A stretch of DNA of 63,974 bases, counting the filler, from Octopus bimaculoides (Eukaryota), in the NCBI RefSeq assembly GCF_001194135.2. It is 6 parts of 6 records of this genome, joined end to end, with 100 filler letters (N's around TTAATTAATTAA, not from the genome) between each part and the next. Parts side by side here need not be neighbours in the genome. Positions count along the whole stretch, not along the records: positions 5,136 to 37,107 come from NC_068984.1; 5 more parts are not named here. One strand, 5' to 3'. The notes below the pieces were generated by a model. That model searched no databases, was not told where the DNA came from, and saw nothing but the letters and a program-made list of their open reading frames with translations. Below, piece by piece: positions 1 through 11,527 of this stretch. The stretch's first letter is position 1; each line of letters opens with the position of its first letter. The position numbers were made by a program, and so were the translations under genes.

Positions 1-9
1 TATATATGC

Positions 10-188
10 CAATTAAATGTGGCGGTCCCATAGAGGACGATGTTACTGTTGTTTTTAGCTCCAGGAAGACATTTCCTCCAGCTGGTTAACGGCACAAAGA
101 CAGTGTCGCTAGCCAGCTGGAGGAGATGTCTTCCTGGGGTTAAAAACAACAGTAACATTGTTCTCTATGGGACTGCCACATTTAGTTG
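10..188. mobile_element. Palindromic (foldback/MITE-like) element, 86-bp stem with 7-nt loop
   Basis: Base-by-base pairing of 10-95 with 103-188 without indels: 76 Watson-Crick pairs, 9 G:T, 1 A:C; set in TA-rich flanks. Confidence 0.8.
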
Positions 189-267
189 TCAGATATATAT
201 TACGATTTTGTACTGTTACTGCTTAACTCTCGCTCAGACATTTAATGTAGCCTCTATATATAGCCCT

Positions 268-375
268 TATAGATAGATAGATAGATAGATTGATAGGTAA
301 GCAGACAGATCGATCGAGAGATAGATAGGTAAACAGACAGACAAATAGATAGATAGATAGATAGATAGATAGATC
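268..375. repeat. (AGAT)n/(AGAC)n tetranucleotide microsatellite
   Basis: Direct reading. Confidence 0.95.
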
Positions 376-1719
376 GGCGTTTATCCTGACCAAATTCTTT
401 CAAAAATCTTTTACCAAAAACGTTATATAGTTTATCGTTTAGCGTCGTTCATTGTTTTTATATACCTCTAACCAAAAGATGAGCGAAATCCAAAAAAAAA
501 ACAACAAATATATATAAAAAAAAAATGAAAAGATAAAAAGGAAAGAAAAATAAATAAATAAATAAATTTAGAAATGAACAAAAGAATATATAAATATTTA
601 AAAATCTGAATAAAAAATAAACGTTTGCTTTCTTCTTCTGAATCATTCCGAGTCGAGTTCCAGAAAGATCTTCATTCTTCTCAAAATGGCAATTACCGGC
701 TGGTAGGATCTACGTGGAGCTTGGGTGAGTGAGTGCGCGCGCGCGTTTATGTGTGTATGAGTGTGTATGTATGTATGTATGTATGTGTGTGTGTGCGTGT
801 GTGTTTGTTTATCGGTGTGTATGTTGTTTGTTCTTCGTTTTTGTTTGTTTGTTTTTGTGCTTTTGGGATAATTTCTGCTGTTTTTTTTTTTTGCTTTTGT
901 AAATTTGTGGTTAGTGTTTTTTTGTTTGTGATCGACACACAGACAGACGTACAGACGTATATAGATGTAGACATATAGCTAAACGTGTATATAAGTATAT
1001 ATACTCACACAGGCACACACACGCAAACACACGTACGTACACACAATTATATATATGTTTATATATATATATATATATATNNNNNNNNNNNNNNNNNNNN
1101 NNNNNNNNNNNNNNNNNNNNNNNNNNNNNNNNNNNNNNNNNNNNNNNNNNNNNNNNNNNNNNNNNNNNNNNNNNNNNNNNNNNNNNNNNNNNNNNNNNNN
1201 NNNNNNNNNNNNNNNNNNNNNNNNNNNNNNNNNNNNNNNNNNNNNNNNNNNNNNNNNNNNNNNNNNNNNNNNNNNNNNNNNNNNNNNNNNNNNNNNNNNN
1301 NNNNNNNNNNNNNNNNNNNNNNNNNNNNNNNNNNNNNNNNNNNNNNNNNNNNNNNNNNNNNNNNNNNNNNNNNNNNNNNNNNNNNNNNNNNNNNNNNNNN
1401 NNNNNNNNNNNNNNNNNNNNNNNNNNNNNNNNNNNNNNNNNNNNNNNNNNNNNNNNNNNNNNNNNNNNNNNNNNNNNNNNNNNNNNNNNNNNNNNNNNNN
1501 NNNNNNNNNNNNNNNNNNNNNNNNNNNNNNNNNNNNNNNNNNNNNNNNNNNNNNNNNNNNNNNNNNNNNNNNNNNNNNNNNNNNNNNNNNNNNNNNNNNN
1601 NNNNNNNNNNNNNNNNNNNNNNNNNNNNNNNNNNNNNNNNNNNNNNNNNNNNNNNNNNNNNNNNNNNNNNNNNNNNNNNNNNNNNNNNNNNNNNNACAAG
1701 TTAGAAGTTCATATTGGTG

Positions 1720-2190
1720 CCATATATTTGGATTTGTACATAGTCGTTCTAGAGAATGTTTAAGAAACCATAAGAAAATTGTGTTTCTTTTAAAATTTGA
1801 GATTACATAGACAGTATTTTATGGGCAGTTCCCATGAGCACTATCTTCAGAATTTCTGCTATTTTGGGGTTTCCTGGTATCCGAGCTAGGTAGCAATCAG
1901 CCCCTTTTGCTATCATTCCTAGCGCACCTGTGACAACAGGTATTGTTTTAATCTTCAGGTTCCACATTTTGCTAATTTCTATTTCAAGATCTTTATATTT
2001 GCTCAGTTTTTGGTAGGTCTTGACAGATACGTTTATATCGATTGGGACAGTCATATCAATGAGGAGGCATGATTTTTGTCTGAAGTCTTTCAATATAATG
2101 TCTGGCCTATTTGCATCTATCTTTCTGTCAGTTTGAATGGTTAAGTTCCAGTGGAGTGAGATGTGATCATTCTCAAGAACTGGAGGTGGT
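1720..2190 (-). mobile_element. 3' fragment of an R4/Dong-like non-LTR retrotransposon (restriction-like endonuclease domain)
   Basis: Minus strand reads PPPVLENDHISLHWNLTIQTDRKIDANRPDIILKDFRQKSCLLIDMTVP...KLSKYKDLEIEI...IPVVTGALG, the RPD..D..K-Y-L and GALG motifs of RLE-type LINEs; abuts an (ATT)n run. Confidence 0.85.
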
Positions 2191-2199
2191 TAGTGTTCC

Positions 2200-2380
2200 C
2201 AATTATTATTATTATTATTATTATTGTTCAGTAGTTTTATTTTTATAACGTGCTTTCACTTCACTACCGAGCGCAGCCTTGGGTATGTGCTGTGGTTTGC
2301 TGTGATGCTCTTATGGTTACTGCATTGAAAGTGTTTTGCGTAGGATGTGTGCAGTGCCCAGGAGTGCAATTTTCTGTACT
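2200..2380 (-). mobile_element. 3' terminus of an R4/Dong-like LINE with (TAA)n tail
   Basis: Reverse complement encodes VQKIALLGTAHILRKTLSMQ* followed by a 3' UTR ending in ...AAAACTACTGAACAATAATAAT; (TAA)n on both sides. Confidence 0.85.
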
Positions 2381-2407
2381 ATTATTATTATTATTATTAT
2401 TATTATT

Positions 2408-2620
2408 AAGGTGTTAAACTGGCACGCTGGACGAAATGCTTGGCGGTATTTCGCCCGTCACTACGTACTGAGTTCGAATTCCGCCGAGGTCGTCTTTGCC
2501 TTTCATCCTTTCAGGGTCAATAAATCAATTACCAGTGAAACACTGGGGTCGATGTAATTGACTAGTCTCCCACCACCCCACAAAATTTCAGGCCTTGTGC
2601 CTATAGCAGAAAGGATTATT
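2408..2620 (+). mobile_element. tRNA-derived SINE, family B
   Basis: B-box-like GAGTTCGAATTCC, body ...GGGGTCGATGTAATTGACT...GCCTTGTGCCTATAGCAGAAAGGATTATT; over ten copies in the window. Confidence 0.85.
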
Positions 2621-2870
2621 AAGGTGGCGAATTGGAAATTAACAAACGGGGCACAATCGTCAGCGCGTCGGACAAAATGCTTACGTCCATCTTTATGTGC
2701 TGAGTTCGCTTTGTGCCTATAACAGAAATGGTTGTCCGTCTTTACGTTCTGAGTTCAAATTCCGCCTAGGGTCCCCTCTGCATTTCATTTCCTTCGGGGT
2801 CAATAACCGACCGGTCCCCTCCCCCAAACGTACAGGCCTTGTGCCTTTAGTGGAAACGATTGTTATTATT
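2621..2870 (+). mobile_element. tRNA-derived SINE, family B (tandem with the previous copy)
   Basis: GAGTTCAAATTCCGCC...GGCCTTGTGCCTTTAGTGGAAAC matches the other copies. Confidence 0.8.
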
Positions 2871-3266
2871 ATGGCTGTTGTTACTGCGGTTGTTATGTAA
2901 TTTCCACAATTAATCACGTCTGTATTTTTACTCATTTCCAGTTGTTGTTGTTGTTGTTGTTGTTGGTATCGATGGTGGTTGTGGTAGCGGCTATGGGGAT
3001 GGTGGTAACGGCGGTGGTTCTGTTGCTGCTGCTGCCGTTTCAGCTCTTGTTTAGGTTAGCTAATTTTCTTGGCGCGGAAATATATTTGTTACAGCTCTGA
3101 GTTAATTAATTTTCTGCGCGTTGGTACATACATACATATATACATATAGAGACACATAGACATACAAACATACATACATCGATGTGTGTATGTTTGTGAT
3201 TCTGTGAGATATATATATATATATATACATAGACACAGACAAATATATATATATATGTATATATAC

Positions 3267-3301
<35 letters not shown>

Positions 3302-3438
3302 TGTATATAGATGTATACATATATGAATATATATATACACACACACACACACATACATACATAGTTATATACACAGGTACAGATCACGTTATATAATATT
3401 TCAAATACCATTTCTCACCAATATACACCGCAGTGTCA

Positions 3439-3482
<44 letters not shown>

Positions 3483-4318
3483 GTGTGTGTGTGTTTATTT
3501 ATTCATGTATATACTTATTTATACATGTATGATTATATATGCATATATTCATACAGAGATAAATGCGTATATCTAAATATATATACATATAAATATANNN
3601 NNNNNNNNNNNNNNNNNNNNNNNNNNNNNNNNNNNNNNNNNNNNNNNNNNNNNNNNNNNNNNNNNNNNNNNNNNNNNNNNNNNNNNNNNNNNNNNNNNNN
3701 NNNNNNNNNNNNNNNNNNNNNNNNNNNNNNNNNNNNNNNNNNNNNNNNNNNNNNNNNNNNNNNNNNNNNNNNNNNNNNNNNNNNNNNNNNNNNNNNNNNN
3801 NNNNNNNNNNNNNNNNNNNNNNNNNNNNNNNNNNNNNNNNNNNNNNNNNNNNNNNNNNNNNNNNNNNNNNNNNNNNNNNNNNNNNNNNNNNNNNNNNNNN
3901 NNNNNNNNNNNNNNNNNNNNNNNNNNNNNNNNNNNNNNNNNNNTATAGTTATGTATTTATGTACATCTGTGTGTGTGTGTGTTTAATTATTTAGCATATT
4001 CCATCCAAACATGCTTTTTCTGTATTCGTATTTTGAAGTTGTTGATATGTTTGTCTGTCCGTGTGTCTCGAATTTCGCATATTTGTCTGTCTCTCTCTGT
4101 CTGTTCGTCTATCCAACGTTCTATCTGCTTTCATGTGCATATATCGCCTCCCTCACTCTCACACATTCCACCTATTCCACCACCACCTCCTCCTTCTCAC
4201 CTTCTTCCCTCTCCTCCTTCTTCGTCTTCTTTCTCCTCCTCCTCCTTTATTGACATTTACCTTTGTTTATTCATACATATCCAGACCCTTTCAATAGCCC
4301 TCTCGTACTCACTTCCTG

Positions 4319-4344
<26 letters not shown>

Positions 4345-4363
<19 letters not shown>

Positions 4364-4562
4364 TTGTCCCCTACCGTCGCTTGACATCCGATGGTGGTGT
4401 TTTTGTCTCTGTAACCTAGCAGTTCGGCATAAGGACCGATAGAATACGAACTAGGCTTACAAAGCATATGCCCTGGGGTCGATTTCTTTAAGTAAAAAAA
4501 AAACCTTATAAAGCGGTGCTCCAGCATGGCCACAGTTGAATGTCTGAAGCAAGCAAAAGATC
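4345..4562 (+). mobile_element. SINE family A, 3' half
   Basis: CGCTTGACATCCGATGGTGGTG...GCGGTGCTCCAGCATGGCCACAG matches the tails at 6770-6975 and 16390-16590. Confidence 0.85.
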
Positions 4563-4569
4563 AAACTAA

Positions 4570-5035
4570 TAGAGGAATAAAAAATATATAAGCGGCCAGC
4601 TGTTAGGAATGTGCTCGCAGAACTTTTCTGACAGCCGTGACTGGGTCCTCCTGCTTTTGTAGCATGGTGTAGGGTTCTGTTGCCAGACATAAGGTCTTCC
4701 AGCTGCCACCCTTTTCACTACCTCCTCCTGGTACTTGAGGTAGGCGCCTGTGTTAATTTTGAGGCCGTGTGAGAAGATAAATGGAGGCATAACGTCGCCA
4801 TCACGAGTGATCACTCCAAACACCATGGTGTTGACTGGATGTTTGACTTTTTAAAAATCATTTTCGGTACGTGTCCTCAGATTGTACTATCCTCAGATTC
4901 ACACCCACACGCACTGAAATGTTCGTATTTGGAGCTTCCGGCGCGAATGCCAAACAGCACAGCATGTCGTTTCCAAATCTCTGGCAGAGTGAACTGTGTC
5001 ACGGTGCTGTTTTTCTCACAGACAGTGCCCAACTG
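4570..5035 (-). mobile_element. Internally deleted Tc1/mariner-superfamily (maT/DD37D-like) transposase remnant
   Basis: Minus strand: N-terminal TQFTLPEIWKRHAVLFGIRAGS joined to KHPVNTMVFGVITRDGDVMPPFIF...AAGRPYVWQQNPTPCYKSRRTQ (equivalent of the second catalytic QQD.AP.H motif). Confidence 0.8.
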
Positions 5036-5135
5036 NNNNNNNNNNNNNNNNNNNNNNNNNNNNNNNNNNNNNNNNNNNNTTAATTAATTAANNNNNNNNN
5101 NNNNNNNNNNNNNNNNNNNNNNNNNNNNNNNNNNN
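5036..5135. other. Artificial scaffold join (44 N + TTAATTAATTAA + 44 N)
   Basis: Identical 100-bp geometry at five places; the 12-mer puts stop codons in all six frames. Confidence 0.95.
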
Positions 5136-5186
<51 letters not shown>

Positions 5187-5192
5187 CATATT

Positions 5193-5352
5193 ATACGACG
5201 GGCTTCTTTCAGTTTCCGTCTACCAAATCCACTCACAAGGCTTTGGTCGCCCCAAGGCTATAGTAGAAGACACTTGCTCAAGATGCCACGCAGTGGGACT
5301 GAACCCGGAACCATGTGGTTGGTAAGCAAGCTACTTACCACACAGCCACTCT
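5193..5352 (-). mobile_element. SINE family A, tRNA-like head
   Basis: Reverse complement GAGTGGCTGTGTGGTAAGTAGCTTGCTTACCAACCACATGGTTCCGGGTTCAGTCCCACTGCGTGGCA (A/B-box-like). Confidence 0.9.
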
Positions 5353-5369
5353 TGAGCCTGTTGTTAATA

Positions 5370-5405
<36 letters not shown>

Positions 5406-5649
5406 GCATTAAGTGAAAGGGATGAAGTCGAGAGAGGCAATTTATATAAAAATGCCTTGCTGTATCTAGTTACATCCCTTTATATCCTGAGTTCATATCC
5501 CGTCGATTAAATTAATTACCAGCCAAATACTGGGTCAATATAATCTACAGCCTTGTTCCTGCGTCAGAAACCATCATTAATATCATTATTAGCATTTTTT
5601 TCACCCTATACTATCGCTATCACCAACACTTACATAATCATCTGCACGC

Positions 5650-5765
<116 letters not shown>

Positions 5766-6450
5766 TCACCTCCATTTCTAATGTGTTTAGAAATAGACTT
5801 TTAAGGTATACACCAAACAAATTTATACCCTCGAACATAGAATTCATAGAAAAAAAAACTTTTCTCCAAGAAGAAATATAAAAAAAAAAATAGTAAAAAA
5901 ACGAAAAAAAAAAAAGTAGAACCGCAAAAGCAGCAACAGCATCATCTATTGTCAGTAGACCTTGAAATTAACTTAGTGTACTTTAAAATAGCTATTTTTC
6001 TAGTTTTTATTTTAAACTTTCTGACCTTTTTTTCATCTTGTATTTTTTATATTTATCCTTAATTTCTACAGCCCTGTTATACGATAGGAGAAAGTTATGA
6101 AAATGCCCTTTGACTTTACGTGTATAAACAAAAATATAAATAAATATTACGTATACCAGCGGAGGCATTGCCGTATGGTTAAGAAGTTCCTTTTTACAAT
6201 TACGTGGTGTCGCGTTCGATCTCACTGTGCGGCATGTGTCTGTTATGTTAGCCTTGGGTTGATTAATACACCCTGGGTATAATTTTGTTGACTGGGAATG
6301 ATATAAAGGTGCTGTCTTAGAACTGCGACAGCCTAATGACTGGGATAAATAAAAGTATATATGTATGCATGCATGTATGTATGAATGCATGTATGTATGT
6401 ATGTATGCATGCATACATAAATGCATGCATGTATGTATGTATGTATGTAT

Positions 6451-6975
6451 GTAGGAGTGTCTGTGTGGTAAGTAGCTTGCTTACCAACCATATGGTTCTG
6501 GGTTCTGTCCCACTGCGTGGCACCTTGGGCAAGTGTCTTCTACTATAGTCTCGGGCCGACCAAAGCCTTGCGAGTGGATTTGGTAGACGGAAACTGAAAG
6601 AAGCCCGTCGTATATATGTATATATATATNNNNNNNNNNNNNNNNNNNNNNNNNNNNNNNNNNNNNNNNNNNNNNNNNNNNNNNNNNNNNNNNNNNNNNN
6701 NNNNNNNNNNNNNNNNNNNNNNNNNNNNNNNTATATATATAATATATATATGCATGTGTGTGTATATGTTTGTGTGTCTGTGTTTGTCCCCCAACTTCGC
6801 TTGACAACCGATGCTGGTGTGTTTACGTCCCCGTAACCTAGCGGTTCGGCAAAAAGGAAGCGATAGAATAAGTATTAGGCTTACAAAGAATAAGTTCTGG
6901 GGTCGATTTGTTCGACTAAAGGCGGTGCCCCAGCATGGCCGCAGTCAAATGACTGAAAAAGAGTAAAAGAGTATG
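6451..6975 (+). mobile_element. Full-length SINE family A with internal (TA)n/(TG)n tract
   Basis: Head 6451-6612, microsatellite plus N gap, tail 6770-6975. Confidence 0.9.
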
Positions 6976-8001
6976 TATGCATGTACGTATATATGTACGT
7001 ACGTATGTAAAAAATAAAAACAAATATGAAACAAAAACAACAAAAGTCAAAAAGACGTAAACTGAGTATATTAGGTTGATGCTCAGCTTAAGATGAAAAA
7101 AAGGGCGGGGGTGATAAAAAGTAGCATGGCTCTTCGTTAGAAAGAAGGAAGAGGAAAGGTCCGGAGAGAAGGAAAAGATTAGTCTGAGAAAAGTACGCGT
7201 GTCGTTACATGGCCGAAGTGACCACATACATATGTATGCATGTGTGTGTGTGTGTGTGTGTGTGGGTGTATGTGTGTTTGTGTGTGTGTGGAGTGTACAC
7301 ACAGATATATNNNNNNNNNNTTATTTCCTAGTATTTCTAGCAAGTTGTGTGACGACAAAAATCCTGCCTCATTTGGACATCTTTGGTGTAGTCAGTTACA
7401 CGGTTGCCCAAGAAATACTTATTACGCTCAGATGGGCGCAAATCAAATGGATTGGATGACATTTTAAGCTAGAGACATCTATCATTACAACATTAATCCT
7501 GAAGAACAACAGATCATAATCATCTTGGGAAAGATACATTTCAGGAATTCTTAATTTACTATCTTTAGGATTACATGGGAATTTAAGCTCTGCTAACAAG
7601 AGACTCGTTAACCATGAAGAACATCTCGCTATTTACTAGCGTAAATATTATGATCGTAATAATTTATTACACTAATCTGTAACAATAGGTGATCACATTG
7701 TAATATGTACTATGTTTTCGCTAAATGTTTTAGATGTTCATGTAATTACAGACACTCTCTCGAACCTCCGACAATGTGGAATGGAATATTCATGATATAA
7801 AGGCTAGAGGGAGAGAAAGCTGCTGCATCAACACAGAGCTGATATTTTATTCATCGACTCGGAGGATATGGAAGTCCAAATTTTCCTCGGTGGTATTTCA
7901 ACCCACAATGCAGAGAACTGACATATTGCAGCCCATTCGATTTGATGCTCTAACAATTCTGTTGACCAACTGTATTAGCTTCTATTTACTGCTATCTCTA
8001 A

Positions 8002-8214
8002 AGTAGCGAGTTGGTAGAATCGTTAGAACGCCGGACAAAATGCTTTGCGGAATTTCGTCAGTTTTTACGTTTTGGATTCAAATTCCAACGAAGTCGACTT
8101 TGCTTTTCATCCTTCGAGGTCGATGAAATAAGTACCAGTTGCGCATTGGGGTCGATGTAATCGGCTGGTCACCTCCCCTCAAATTTCAGGCCTTGTGCTT
8201 CAGTAGAAAGAATT
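8002..8214 (+). mobile_element. tRNA-derived SINE, family B
   Basis: AGCGAGTTGGTAGAATCGTTAGAACGCCGG...GATTCAAATTCC...GCCTTGTGCTTCAGTAGAAAG. Confidence 0.85.
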
Positions 8215-9159
8215 TTCTGCTATTTGTACTAGGCCATTGAAAGGCGTGTGGTTGCTAGTGATGTATCTGCGTATAACGGTGTCATAAGGAAACGTCAATG
8301 AGTCAAGTAGGTCAGCTAAATGCAATAATGTCACTACAGTAAGTTGTAATGTTTTCCAATTAATGTTTCGTTCATTTCCAGCCAGCCTCCTGCTATTGGA
8401 GACCTGCAAAGATCATCGGCTGGACATTATATTTTCCTTCATCCCACAAAAAAAATTACATTAAAATCTTCGCGCAGATTTTACTTTGAGAGCAATACTG
8501 ACCAAGTAGCTGACATGATTAGACACAAATTATAGATAGTTAATATCTTCAATAGAACTCCTAAAAGCCAATTGGTTACGAGGTATCTTTAATCTAAAAC
8601 ACGGTCATTTTCAGCAAGTCGAGCGACCACGTAGGTGCTCTTTCTTTAGCTAGGCGTGTTTTATGAAATTTTAAGAACTCAATAACTACAAAAAATGAAA
8701 AGTAATTAATTGAATTTCAACATCGATACGAATCTGAACTGTTACAGCTGAAAATGAAAGATTACCATAACATTTCATATAAGAGATGAAAGAAAAAGAA
8801 GAAAAAAATATCCATTAAGTAATGAAGAAATAATTGATCGTTCTGGATAACAATTCATTTTCCTTAAGTTACGTACTAAATGACGAAACCCATAAGTTAA
8901 AATAATGTTTGATTTTAAAAATAGCTAATTTTTTTTCAAATCATACTTTAACGTCTTGAATTAGCACACTTGGGTATTCAAAAATACAAGGTGGTCAGGA
9001 TTGGAACGACTTTTATCAGATCATTTCAATCAAGTCTGACCTGATAACAGCAACGAATATTGACCTCGTATATTATATGAGAAAAAAATGGCAAACCAGT
9101 TTATTGACGCCTTTTACACGTTGAAGTTTCCAAATCGAATAAATAAACCCTACGAGGGA

Positions 9160-9350
9160 TGCTCTATGTCGTCGCTCTAACTGCAAGAAATAACAACTAA
9201 ATTTCTTTCAGATGTTACCTTGCCGGCTTAGAAAAGGATCACATTGTATAACTTGATCCTAAGTTCTCTGTACTTAGGAAAAACACAAGACAGCCACACT
9301 TGGAATCAATTTGATCAGAGGACAGTTCGTTTTTGGGCTAAACAACAGCA
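9160..9350 (+). repeat. Old dispersed repeat (related copies near 12020-12200, 21340-21520, 23175-23350, 56265-56420)
   Basis: Loose shared motifs (CTAG(A)AATAGC...CAAAT..., TGATCA...) seen by eye; family not identified. Confidence 0.4.
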
Positions 9351-9475
9351 ATTCAAATAGGCATAAAATCACTGAAGGTAAAAGCTGCTACTTCTAACAT
9401 TTCAGCATTACAATGTTTAACATAGAAAAAATTGATGCTAATAAAAGTAAAGACTGGATGTCTTCAGTGACTTAC

Positions 9476-9651
9476 CTGCCGTTCTGTAAGATCAAGAGCA
9501 ACAGCAATCTCGTAACGCCGAAGTCTGGTGAGGTAATTGTGAATTGCGAATTCTTTTTCCAATTCCCGTATTTGATGTTTTGTAAATGCAGTCCTTTCTT
9601 TTCTGGGCTTAGTTGTTAAATCAAGTTTATACGATGACGAGTTATGAGAAT
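9476..9651 (-). CDS. Meox: Mox/Meox (mesenchyme homeobox) internal exon encoding most of the homeodomain, up to the start of helix 3
   Basis: 176-bp exon: acceptor TTTTTTGTGTTGCAG| (phase 1), donor CGGCAG|GTAAGT (phase 0); translates (D)[69 protein letters not shown] and [14 protein letters not shown] are Meox-diagnostic; the intron before VKVWFQNRR is at the position I recall for vertebrate MEOX. Confidence 0.96.
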
Positions 9652-9975
9652 CTGCAACACAAAAAATGCAATAACGTTTGTATTTCGAGAAATTTGATCC
9701 GGTGTAAATTTAATATTGTTATATAGCAAAACATAAGAGTAAAAACAAGCACAGAGTTAGAAATACGTAGAATTTAGTTTTACCATTTCCGCTTTGAAAT
9801 GTATGTATGCTTGTATGTATGTATGTATGTATGTATGTATGTATGTATGTATGTATGTATGTGGGTTTCTGCCTGTCTTTCTGTCAGTCAATAAAAATAT
9901 AATGAAACATTAGGTGAATTCCAACATGAACATAACATCAAATATATCTATGAAATATGTATATCATATATCGCA

Positions 9976-10007
<32 letters not shown>

Positions 10008-11527
10008 NNNNNNNNNNNNNNNNNNNNNNNNNNNNNNNNNNNNNNNNNNNNNNNNNNNNNNNNNNNNNNNNNNNNNNNNNNNNNNNNNNNNNNNNNNNNN
10101 NNNNNNNNNNNNNNNNNNNNNNNNNNNNNNNNNNNNNNNNNNNNNNNNNNNNNNNNNNNNNNNNNNNNNNNNNNNNNNNNNNNNNNNNNNNNNNNNNNNN
10201 NNNNNNNNNNNNNNNNNNNNNNNNNNNNNNNNNNNNNNNNNNNNNNNNNNNNNNNNNNNNNNNNNNNNNNNNNNNNNNNNNNNNNNNNNNNNNNNNNNNN
10301 NNNNNNNNNNNNNNNNNNNNNNNNNNNNNNNNNNNNNNNNNNNNNNNNNNNNNNNNNNNNNNNNNNNNNNNNNNNNNNNNNNNNNNNNNNNNNNNNNNNN
10401 NNNNNNNNNNNNNNNNNNNNNNNNNNNNNNNNNNNNNNNNNNNNNNNNNNNNNNNNNNNNNNNNNNNNNNNNNNNNNNNNNNNNNNNNNNNNNNNNNNNN
10501 NNNNNNNNNNNNNNNNNNNNNNNNNNNNNNNNNNNNNNNNNNNNNNNNNNNNNNNNNNNNNNNNNNNNNNNNNNNNNNNNNNNNNNNNNNNNNNNNNNNN
10601 NNNNNNNNNNNNNNNNNNNNNNNNNNNNNNNNNNNNNNNNNNNNNNNNNNNNNNNNNNNNNNNNNNNNNNNNNNNNNNNNNNNNNNNNNNNNNNNNNNNN
10701 NNNNNNNNNNNNNNNNNNNNNNNNNNNNNNNNNNNNNNNNNNNNNNNNNNNNNNNNNNNNNNNNNNNNNNNNNNNNNNNNNNNNNNNNNNNNNNNNNNNN
10801 NNNNNNNNNNNNNNNNNNNNNNNNNNNNNNNNNNNNNNNNNNNNNNNNNNNNNNNNNNNNNNNNNNNNNNNNNNNNNNNNNNNNNNNNNNNNNNNNNNNN
10901 NNNNNNNNNNNNNNNNNNNNNNNNNNNNNNNNNNNNNNNNNNNNNNNNNNNNNNNNNNNNNNNNNNNNNNNNNNNNNNNNNNNNNNNNNNAAAAAAAAAA
11001 AAATTTTAAGCCCACCCCAAAAACACTCAGTTTTTCAAAACGTGGGGAAAATATATCTAGTTTGTTATAGTGTGGTGAACATTTTAGCTTAAACGCACTT
11101 AAGGCAAGATGAGTTTGTTTTCACTCAAATCTCTGATTATAACTATTTTCTGTTCAGTTATGTTTTAGTGCCTTCATGGATGGCATATAACTCACTAGTT
11201 CTCAATTCCTTTATATAAAATTTTGCTTTAATTTTTTGCTTGAATTAATCAGAGGCGGTATAATAGCTCCCATGAGCATTTTTATGCCCCCCAAGGGTTT
11301 ACTTGAAGAGAGAAAACAGTTAGTTTTACACTGCGGGTGTCTTCCTCAGATCTGGCCCAAATGTTTACAACACAGTGTACTCTGCTAAATGCAAGCAACG
11401 ACTAAATGGTTGTGTTAAATAGGATGACAGATTAATTCAACCAATATCAACATATATTCCCTTATTCCTACTCTCTGGTCATTCATTCTTTCTTTCTTAG
11501 TTTATACACTCTCTTATCTTAATACTT

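What the first reader, a model, noticed from the sequence alone, without database searches (positions are those of the whole stretch)
9476..9651. Hidden Mox/Meox homeobox exon, missed by the ORF track, with no partner exons in 64 kb
Seen: a 176-bp minus-strand exon encoding a Meox-type homeodomain up to ...DLTERQ. From memory it differs from human MEOX2 at 4 of 44 residues (E>H, A>K, H>I, N>A), and both intron phases match the vertebrate layout. I found neither the VKVWFQNRRMKWKR exon in 1-9475 nor a first coding exon with a phase-1 donor in 9652-63974. Inference: very long TE-inflated introns (possibly over 50 kb) or exons hidden in N gaps. Established: Mox is an ANTP-class gene ancestrally linked to the Hox cluster and involved in mesoderm/muscle patterning. 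No other homeobox is visible here.
Basis: partly seen in the sequence, partly recalled or inferred. Interest (0 to 1): 0.7.

Follow-up and report, generated by a model that had tools for sequence, protein, structure and literature searches.

The report
Middle exon of octopus Mox gene
The 176-base stretch is the real middle exon of the Mox (Meox) homeobox gene of an octopus-like cephalopod; the gene is already known, and its other two exons are missing only because this 32-kb assembly fragment is too short to hold them.

Summary
Window 9651..9476 (minus strand) is a 176-nt exon with a consensus acceptor (T-rich tract, cAG|AT) and a consensus donor (CAG|GTAAGT). It encodes [14 protein letters not shown] plus homeodomain residues 1-44.

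Every family-named database hit is Mox/MEOX, at 74-91% identity. The best solved non-Mox homeodomain, HoxA9, reaches about 62%. A 1439-nt intron-less contig from another species (L004) encodes a 353-aa Mox protein. Its residues 221-279 match the window's exon 58/58. At DNA level there are 37 differences, all synonymous, and similarity stops exactly at both predicted splice sites. The exon is therefore under strong purifying selection, and in a relative it is joined to an exon 1 of about 220 codons and an exon 3 of 74 codons.

Neither partner exon is in the piece. Only 4.3 kb lie downstream, and two mollusc relatives have exon 3 at 4.0-4.6 kb. Upstream there are 27.5 kb without exon 1, 3.4 kb of it N. 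The piece ends in microsatellites at both ends, and every gap is flanked by microsatellite. Assembly fragmentation, perhaps with a long intron 1, explains the lone exon.

A dispersed repeat matches only Octopus vulgaris proteins. Octopus meox2 is already annotated and published, so this is ordinary and already known.

The parts
9476..9651 (-). Exon 2 of a Mox (Meox) homeobox gene: 176 nt, made of 2 nt of a split codon (C|AT = His in the related transcript) plus 58 codons.
   Evidence: Searches give the sequence and frame. Pfam Homeodomain; named Mox hits; 58/58 aa identity to P0239, with DNA similarity bounded exactly by 9651 and 9476.
9476..9607 (-). The homeobox part of the exon: homeodomain residues 1-44 ([44 protein letters not shown]), covering the N-terminal arm, helix 1, helix 2 and the start of helix 3.
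   Evidence: Pfam positions 1-43 of 57; alignment A1 has 34 invariant columns across Mox proteins, including LTRLRRYE.
9617..9631 (-). The conserved pre-homeodomain motif YKLDL (Y/F-K/Q-L-D-L in lophotrochozoan Mox proteins).
   Evidence: present in the mollusc, annelid, nemertean and brachiopod Mox sequences.
9652..9670 (-). 3' splice site of intron 1: a T-rich tract (tgcattttttgtgttgc) and the AG at 9653-9652. Phase 1.
   Evidence: The acceptor is at the same position and phase in L001, L002 and L003 and in the vertebrate-type L005. Identity to the L004 transcript falls to 5/19 just upstream.
9470..9475 (-). 5' splice site of intron 2: GTAAGT directly after CAG (Gln44). Phase 0.
   Evidence: Of the 120 first-search hits, 109 are genomic ORFs that diverge right after ...ERQ, and 100 of those continue with V, a GTN codon. 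The L004 transcript continues with VKVWFQNRR.
9671..37107 (-). Sequence upstream of exon 2, most likely part of intron 1. It holds no Mox exon 1 and no other recognisable gene. It carries 3387 N in eight gaps, microsatellites, SINE-like copies and a mariner-like remnant.
   Evidence: no exon 1 match and no LHHYP motif; no Pfam domain above its cut-off; repeats and gaps.
5136..9469 (-). Sequence downstream of exon 2, the first 4.3 kb of intron 2. It holds no exon 3 and carries 112 N in two gaps.
   Evidence: no WFQNRR motif and no exon 3 match; relatives have exon 3 at 4.0-4.6 kb; the sequence was read through.

Best explanation
This is exon 2, the middle of three coding exons, of the single-copy-type Mox (mesenchyme/mesoderm homeobox, Meox) gene of a cephalopod, most likely an octopod. 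After splicing, a phase-1 acceptor joins it to a long, poorly conserved exon 1. In the related transcript exon 1 has about 220 codons and an N-terminus of MDQRVYSMNAPALHHYP. A phase-0 donor joins it to exon 3, which supplies the rest of helix 3 (VKVWFQNRRMKWKR...) and the C-terminus. The product is an ANTP-class homeodomain transcription factor.

Shown here: the exon, its splice signals, its family, strong purifying selection, and the exon 1-2-3 join in a relative.

Inferred: that the window's own species splices it the same way, and that the partner exons lie on neighbouring sequence outside this 32-kb fragment. That puts exon 3 more than 4.3 kb downstream and exon 1 more than 27 kb upstream.

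From the literature: Mox acts in mesoderm and muscle, and octopus meox2 is expressed in arm tissue and endothelial cells.
For: - Sequence and frame.
- Pfam Homeodomain, E 1.4e-12.
- All family-named hits are Mox/MEOX: Mya arenaria MEOX2-like 87%, Biomphalaria MOX-2 87%, Lamellibrachia MOX-2 84%, bird MEOX1 74-90%, Tubulanus MOX-2-like 88%, Terebratalia 'mesoderm homeobox' 80%. The best non-Mox solved structure, HoxA9, scores 47 bits at about 62% identity.
- P0239, a 353-aa Mox protein, is 58/58 identical to the exon and is encoded without interruption on the 1439-nt contig L004.
- blastn of L004 against the window gives 79.2% identity over exactly 9651..9474. All 37 differences within the exon's 58 codons are synonymous (5 first, 0 second and 32 third codon positions), and the flanks are at random identity.
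- pN/pS is 0.04-0.10 against three other lophotrochozoan genomic exons, which have the acceptor and donor at the same positions.
- The intron positions are conserved to a vertebrate-type MEOX exon.
- Octopod origin: the ORF of a dispersed repeat hits only two proteins, both from Octopus vulgaris.
- Fragmentation: the piece starts with (AC)n and ends with (CA)n, and all gaps are flanked by microsatellite.
- Relatives have exon 3 at 4.0 and 4.6 kb, against 4.34 kb available here.
- Octopus meox2 expression is published (PMC9712504; PMC9115989).
Against: - No transcript or protein of the window's own species was found, so splicing at 9651 and 9476 is shown only in a relative. That relative is diverged to synonymous saturation.
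- L004 is taken to be an mRNA-derived contig because its ORF is uninterrupted. The library type of SRR27666065 could not be checked, so a processed retrogene cannot be strictly excluded.
- Exons 1 and 3 were not located, so the intactness of the whole gene in this genome is not demonstrated.
- The species assignment rests on one repeat family.
Confidence: 0.9

Rival explanations
1. It is an orphan or pseudo-exon: a leftover of a broken or partly duplicated Mox gene that is no longer spliced into a functional mRNA.
For: No partner exon lies in 32 kb. Partial duplication of this very exon does happen: intron 2 of the L001 Mox locus carries 5-7 decayed copies of the exon's 3' end plus the donor site.
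Against: The exon is complete, has consensus splice sites on both sides, and shows 0 non-synonymous against 37 synonymous differences to a distant relative. The decayed copies in L001, by contrast, are 64-83% identical and carry stops. The lack of partner exons is expected from the size of the piece alone.
Confidence: 0.04
2. It is the same functional gene, but with a short intron 1: exon 1 is hidden inside one of the N gaps of the piece, 983 N at 10008-10990 or 730 N at 17687-18416.
For: Exon 1 has about 661-682 coding nt in the relative. That would fit only in these two gaps. Its Gly-rich, GC-rich stretch could be hard to assemble.
Against: The 730-N gap has (TA)n on both sides. The 983-N gap has (TA)n on one side and poly(A) on the other. 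No trace of exon 1 coding sequence or of the conserved N-terminal motif reaches either gap edge. The exon would have to fill the gap almost exactly.
Confidence: 0.05
3. The exon belongs to another ANTP-class homeobox family (Hox, Evx, Gbx and so on) and only resembles Mox.
For: Only 44 of 60 homeodomain residues are present. One hit carries a non-Mox name: 'Homeotic protein deformed-like' from Tribolium, P0196.
Against: P0196 itself has the Mox signature sequence ([12 protein letters not shown]...[21 protein letters not shown]), so its name is an annotation slip. All other named hits are Mox. Identity to Mox is 74-100% against about 62% to the best Hox structure. The intron at homeodomain residue 44/45 and the pre-homeodomain YKLDL motif are shared with Mox genes.
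Confidence: 0.01

Closest known systems
Cephalopod Mox transcript P0239 / L004 (Logan assembly of SRR27666065, unnamed)
   Same: It is 58/58 aa identical over the exon. The split codon and both exon junctions fall exactly where the window's splice sites are.
   Different: It is a different species: 21% nucleotide divergence, all synonymous. It is a spliced sequence, so it says nothing about intron lengths. Its exons 1 and 3 have no counterpart in the piece.
Octopus vulgaris meox2 / 'Homeobox protein mox-2' (Styfhals et al. 2022, PMC9712504; Petrosino et al. 2022, PMC9115989)
   Same: It is the same gene family in the same animal group as inferred for the window. It is annotated, RT-PCR validated, and expressed in arm tissue and endothelial cells.
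   Different: No sequence of it was available here for direct comparison. The published forward primer lies in exon 3, which the piece lacks.
Other lophotrochozoan Mox genes: Mya arenaria MEOX2-like, Biomphalaria glabrata MOX-2, Lamellibrachia MOX-2, Tubulanus MOX-2-like, Terebratalia 'mesoderm homeobox'
   Same: They are 80-88% identical over the exon and share the YKLDL-type motif and His at homeodomain position 11 (molluscs and others). The splice positions are the same in the genomic loci L001-L003.
   Different: They have a few substitutions (e.g. A21/I22 against N/L or T/L). The window and P0239 carry two extra codons between the acceptor and YKLDL compared with L001-L003.
Vertebrate MEOX1/MEOX2 (Gax)
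   Same: 40 of 44 homeodomain residues are identical. The phase-1 acceptor and the phase-0 donor after Gln44 are the same, and the exon is 173 nt against 176 nt.
   Different: There are four homeodomain substitutions (E11H, A18K, H22I, N37A). The pre-homeodomain motif is YKLDL rather than YK(S/A)D(V/L). Vertebrates have two paralogues.

Membership tests
Mox/Meox (ANTP-class homeobox family) | It contains an ANTP-class homeodomain. | tested here: met
   Pfam PF00046 at 47.7 bits (cut-off 22.9), positions 1-43 of 57. Only the part encoded by exon 2 is present.
Mox/Meox (ANTP-class homeobox family) | It is closest in sequence to recognised Mox proteins rather than to other homeobox families. | tested here: met
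   Named hits are MOX/MEOX at 74-91% identity and 76-144 bits. Full-length Mox proteins of a nemertean, a brachiopod and an annelid are 80-88% identical. The best non-Mox solved homeodomain, HoxA9, scores 47 bits at about 62% identity. No formal phylogeny was made.
Mox/Meox (ANTP-class homeobox family) | It carries the Mox signature residues in helices 1-2 (…[20 protein letters not shown]). | tested here: met
   These columns are invariant in alignment A1 of 11 Mox sequences, the window included. That the signature is exclusive to Mox rests on my own knowledge.
Mox/Meox (ANTP-class homeobox family) | It has a phase-0 intron inside the homeobox, between homeodomain residues 44 and 45. | tested here: met
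   CAG|GTAAGT at 9476/9475. The same break occurs in 109 of 120 genomic hits, in L001-L003 and in the vertebrate-type L005.
Mox/Meox (ANTP-class homeobox family) | It has a phase-1 intron a few codons upstream of the pre-homeodomain Y/F-K motif, giving the three-exon layout. | tested here: met
   AG|AT at 9652/9651. The phase and position are the same in L001-L003 and L005. The junction is confirmed by the L004 transcript.
Mox/Meox (ANTP-class homeobox family) | The homeodomain is complete, with the recognition helix (VKVWFQNRRMKWKR) encoded by exon 3 of the same gene. | not testable with these tools
   Exon 3 is not in the piece. It is present in the related transcript and in L001 and L002. 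Sequence beyond 5136 is not available.
Mox/Meox (ANTP-class homeobox family) | It is transcribed and spliced in the organism itself. | not testable with these tools
   This is shown only for a related species (L004) and reported for O. vulgaris in the literature.
Extended Hox complex (Hox-Evx-Mox linkage) | It is physically linked to Hox or Evx genes. | not testable with these tools
   No other homeobox lies in the 32-kb piece, and that is far too short to judge. Cephalopod Hox genes are reported as widely dispersed (PMC9635652).

The most novel reading that the evidence does not exclude
Intron 1 of this octopod's Mox gene is really longer than 27 kb and filled with microsatellites and SINE-like elements. 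That is at least six times the 4-5 kb of intron 2 in the bivalve-like and gastropod-like relatives. The gene would then be another example of the stretched developmental loci of cephalopods, standing alone without any Hox or Evx neighbour.
Probability: 0.6. Interest if true: 0.15.

Novelty: already known. Interest (0 to 1): 0.1.

Why it matters
It matters little beyond annotation. The result shows that a start-codon ORF track misses internal exons of well-known developmental genes, and that fragmented short-read scaffolds can present a normal gene as a lone exon. The exon is a useful anchor for joining scaffolds or for finding the Mox locus in a better assembly of this species. It could also be used there to ask whether Mox is still linked to Hox or Evx in cephalopods. 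It reveals no new biology by itself.

Tried and rejected
- I searched for exon 3 with a WFQNRR-type regex in six frames and with tblastn of two mollusc exon-3 peptides at E<=100. I also ran tblastn with the full cephalopod protein and ten other full-length Mox proteins. All found nothing.
- I searched for exon 1 with the same tblastn runs and with a regex for the conserved N-terminal motif (MDQR.Y, LHHYP). Nothing was found.
- I compared all ORFs of L001-L003 with the piece to find conserved exons. Only exon 2 matched.
- A Mox/homeodomain profile against all 1146 six-frame ORFs gave no second homeobox.
- Rfam and tRNA scans of the piece gave no hit, so the SINE-like repeat could not be tied to a tRNA head.
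- Pfam on 18 of the longer ORFs gave nothing above cut-off, only a weak DDE_3 tail.
- Looking up genomic loci for Mya arenaria P0121 and Batillaria P0247, to measure intron lengths in annotated genomes, failed because they are not on record.
- The Albertin 2015 octopus genome paper is not held.
- The O. vulgaris Meox2 primers do not match the window, since they lie in exon 3 and the UTR. The forward primer matches L004 with 2 mismatches, so L004 is not O. vulgaris.
- I considered and rejected a Hox or other family assignment, a chance ORF, and a decayed pseudo-exon.

Full report
**What is there.** The piece is 31,972 bases (5136-37107), 34.6% G+C, with 3,499 N in ten gaps. On the minus strand, 9651..9476 reads tgcattttttgtgttgcAG|AT TCT CAT AAC ... 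GAA CGG CAG|GTAAGT. In the frame that starts at 9649 it gives 58 sense codons: [58 protein letters not shown]. The two leading bases make the upstream junction phase 1. The exon ends in phase 0 after Gln44 of the homeodomain. The only start-codon ORF in this frame is 32 aa, which explains why an ORF track did not show the exon.

**Is it more than chance?** Pfam Homeodomain matches at E 1.4e-12, covering profile positions 1-43 of 57. A profile built from Mox sequences, searched against all 1146 six-frame ORFs of the piece, hits this ORF at 7.9e-37 and nothing else below 0.9.

**Which family?**
- A search of 5.8 billion proteins gave 309 hits. Every hit that carries a family name is MOX/MEOX.
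- A probe was made of the exon peptide plus 20 exon-3 residues taken from mollusc relatives (VKVWFQNRRMKWKRVKGTKL). Its best named hits are MEOX2-like of the bivalve Mya arenaria (87%), MOX-2 of the snail Biomphalaria (87%) and MOX-2 of the annelid Lamellibrachia (84%).
- Full-length proteins from the representative search are named MOX-2-like (Tubulanus, 88% over the exon) and 'mesoderm homeobox' (Terebratalia, 80%).
- The best solved non-Mox homeodomain, HoxA9, reaches only 47 bits and about 62% identity.
- One hit is named 'deformed-like' (Tribolium, P0196), but its sequence has the Mox signature, so the name is an annotation slip.

**Exon structure.** Of the 120 listed first-search hits, 109 are single-exon genomic ORFs that diverge immediately after ...ERQ, and 100 of those continue with V (GTN). 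Three lophotrochozoan genomic loci (L001, L002, L003) have the acceptor (AG|AT) and the donor at the same codon positions. A vertebrate-type MEOX exon on L005 is cAG|AC...CAG|GTACGT, 173 nt, phase 1 / phase 0, one codon shorter than here.

**Is the exon used?** The representative search returned P0239, a 353-aa protein whose residues 221-279 equal the window's peptide 58/58, plus Val. P0239 is encoded as one uninterrupted ORF on a 1439-nt contig (L004, Logan assembly of SRR27666065). An in-frame upstream ATG there gives the conserved lophotrochozoan N-terminus MDQRVYSMNAPALHHYP.

blastn aligns L004 939-1116 to window 9651-9474 at 79.2% identity without gaps. Identity is at random level just outside both ends (5/19 and 5/15). 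All 37 differences within the exon's 58 codons are synonymous: 5 at first, 0 at second and 32 at third codon positions, with about 39 synonymous and 135 non-synonymous sites.

Two things follow.
- The exon has been under strong purifying selection since a deep split.
- In a relative, the sequence equivalent to this exon is joined to exon 1 through the split codon C|AT = His, and to exon 3 (VKVWFQNRRMKWKRVKGAQLVKDKVTGQLKPLM...). The joins fall exactly at the predicted junctions.

I infer that L004 is mRNA-derived, but the library type could not be checked. Against L001-L003, pN/pS is 0.04-0.10 with saturated synonymous sites.

**Where are the partner exons?**
- No match to exon 1 or exon 3 of P0239 or of ten other full-length Mox proteins exists in the piece. 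The N-terminal motif is absent as well.
- Downstream, only 4,340 bases are available, 112 of them N. In L001 and L002, probably a bivalve and a gastropod judging by their exon 3 sequences, exon 3 lies about 4.0 and 4.6 kb downstream. Its absence here is therefore uninformative.
- Upstream, 27,456 bases are available (3,387 N) without exon 1 and without any other recognisable gene.
- Only the 983-N and 730-N gaps could hide a coding exon 1 of about 661-682 nt. The 730-N gap lies between (TA)n arrays, and the 983-N gap lies between (TA)n and poly(A), so a hidden exon is unlikely.
- The piece itself begins with (AC)n and ends with (CA)n. This suggests a whole small scaffold of a short-read assembly that broke at microsatellites.
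- The lone exon is therefore best explained by assembly fragmentation, with an intron 1 of at least about 27 kb if the scaffold is correct.

**Organism.** A dispersed SINE-like element occurs at least four times in the piece, with copies 80-94% alike. The ORF through one copy matches only two proteins in the whole database, both from Octopus vulgaris, at 65% and 53% identity. Together with the AT-rich, microsatellite-rich sequence, this points to an octopod. L004 must come from a different, distantly related cephalopod. Its synonymous sites are saturated. It differs at 2 of 20 bases from the published O. vulgaris Meox2 forward primer, and the reverse primer has no match in it.

**What it does.** By homology, the gene encodes an ANTP-class homeodomain transcription factor. 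Exon 2 supplies the N-terminal arm, helices 1 and 2 and the start of helix 3. Exon 3 supplies the DNA-reading part of helix 3. Mox genes act in mesoderm and muscle (established knowledge; brachiopod data in PMC4404124, listed). [quoted passage not shown]

**Comparison and novelty.** All Mox-defining features that could be tested are met: homeodomain, best similarity, signature residues, and both intron positions and phases. The complete homeodomain, expression in this species and linkage to Hox or Evx cannot be tested on this piece. The gene is already known and annotated in octopus, so nothing here departs from the known family. Interest 0.1.

Noticed in passing
window 5192-5351 (+), 6429-6623 (-), 16157-16321 (-), 33040-33211 (+); second segment 6852-6961 / 16463-16572: A dispersed SINE-like element occurs in at least four copies that are 80-94% alike, each next to a (TA)n or (TG)n array. 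The ORF through one copy matches only two database proteins, both from Octopus vulgaris. Neither Rfam nor ARAGORN detects a tRNA-like head.
   Followed up: partly
window 5138-5168, 37030-37107 and the flanks of all N gaps (e.g. 9979-10007, 17622-17686 / 18417-18459, 26437-26471 / 26881-26930): The piece starts with (AC)n and ends with (CA)n, and every N gap is flanked by microsatellite. This looks like a complete small scaffold of a short-read assembly that broke at simple repeats. Tandem repeats make up 9% of the non-N bases.
   Followed up: partly
window about 31739-31843 (+), within ORF 31493-31927: There is a remnant of the C-terminal end of a Tc1/mariner-type DDE transposase (...RDIWPPRSPDLNPLDFSVWSILE...). 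Pfam DDE_3 matches at E 0.023 and 15 bits, below the cut-off.
   Followed up: partly
window 35270-35524 (-); 24534-24719 vs 35066-35251; 35467-35651 vs 36179-36363: An ORF here (...IPADDNVSLKEMEKLSKYKNLEIEVTRMRSIKTETIPFIVGALG...) resembles, from memory, the tail of non-LTR retrotransposon ORFs, but Pfam gives no hit. Nearby there is an 84% inverted copy and a 79% direct repeat, so further dispersed repeats are present.
   Followed up: no
window 24402-24476 and 24652-24726: A 75-nt segment is repeated at 99% identity 250 nt apart, directly after the 398-N gap. It may be an assembly artefact or a very recent local duplication.
   Followed up: no
window 15670-16203 (+) and 35766-36059 (-): Long Asp/Asn-rich pseudo-ORFs arise here from (GAT)n and (ATC)n trinucleotide arrays. 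They are not genes.
   Followed up: no
L001 11253-12961 (intron 2 of a probable bivalve Mox locus): Five to seven decayed copies (64-83% identity) of a 70-115 nt segment lie scattered through intron 2. The segment spans the 3' end of Mox exon 2 plus its donor site. They are repeated partial duplications of the exon-intron junction, and some keep ...LDLTERQ|GT.
   Followed up: partly
first-search hits: In 8 of the 109 genomic Mox exon ORFs the residue after ...ERQ is Ala (GCN) instead of Val (GTN). This may indicate GC-AG introns at this conserved junction in some taxa.
   Followed up: no
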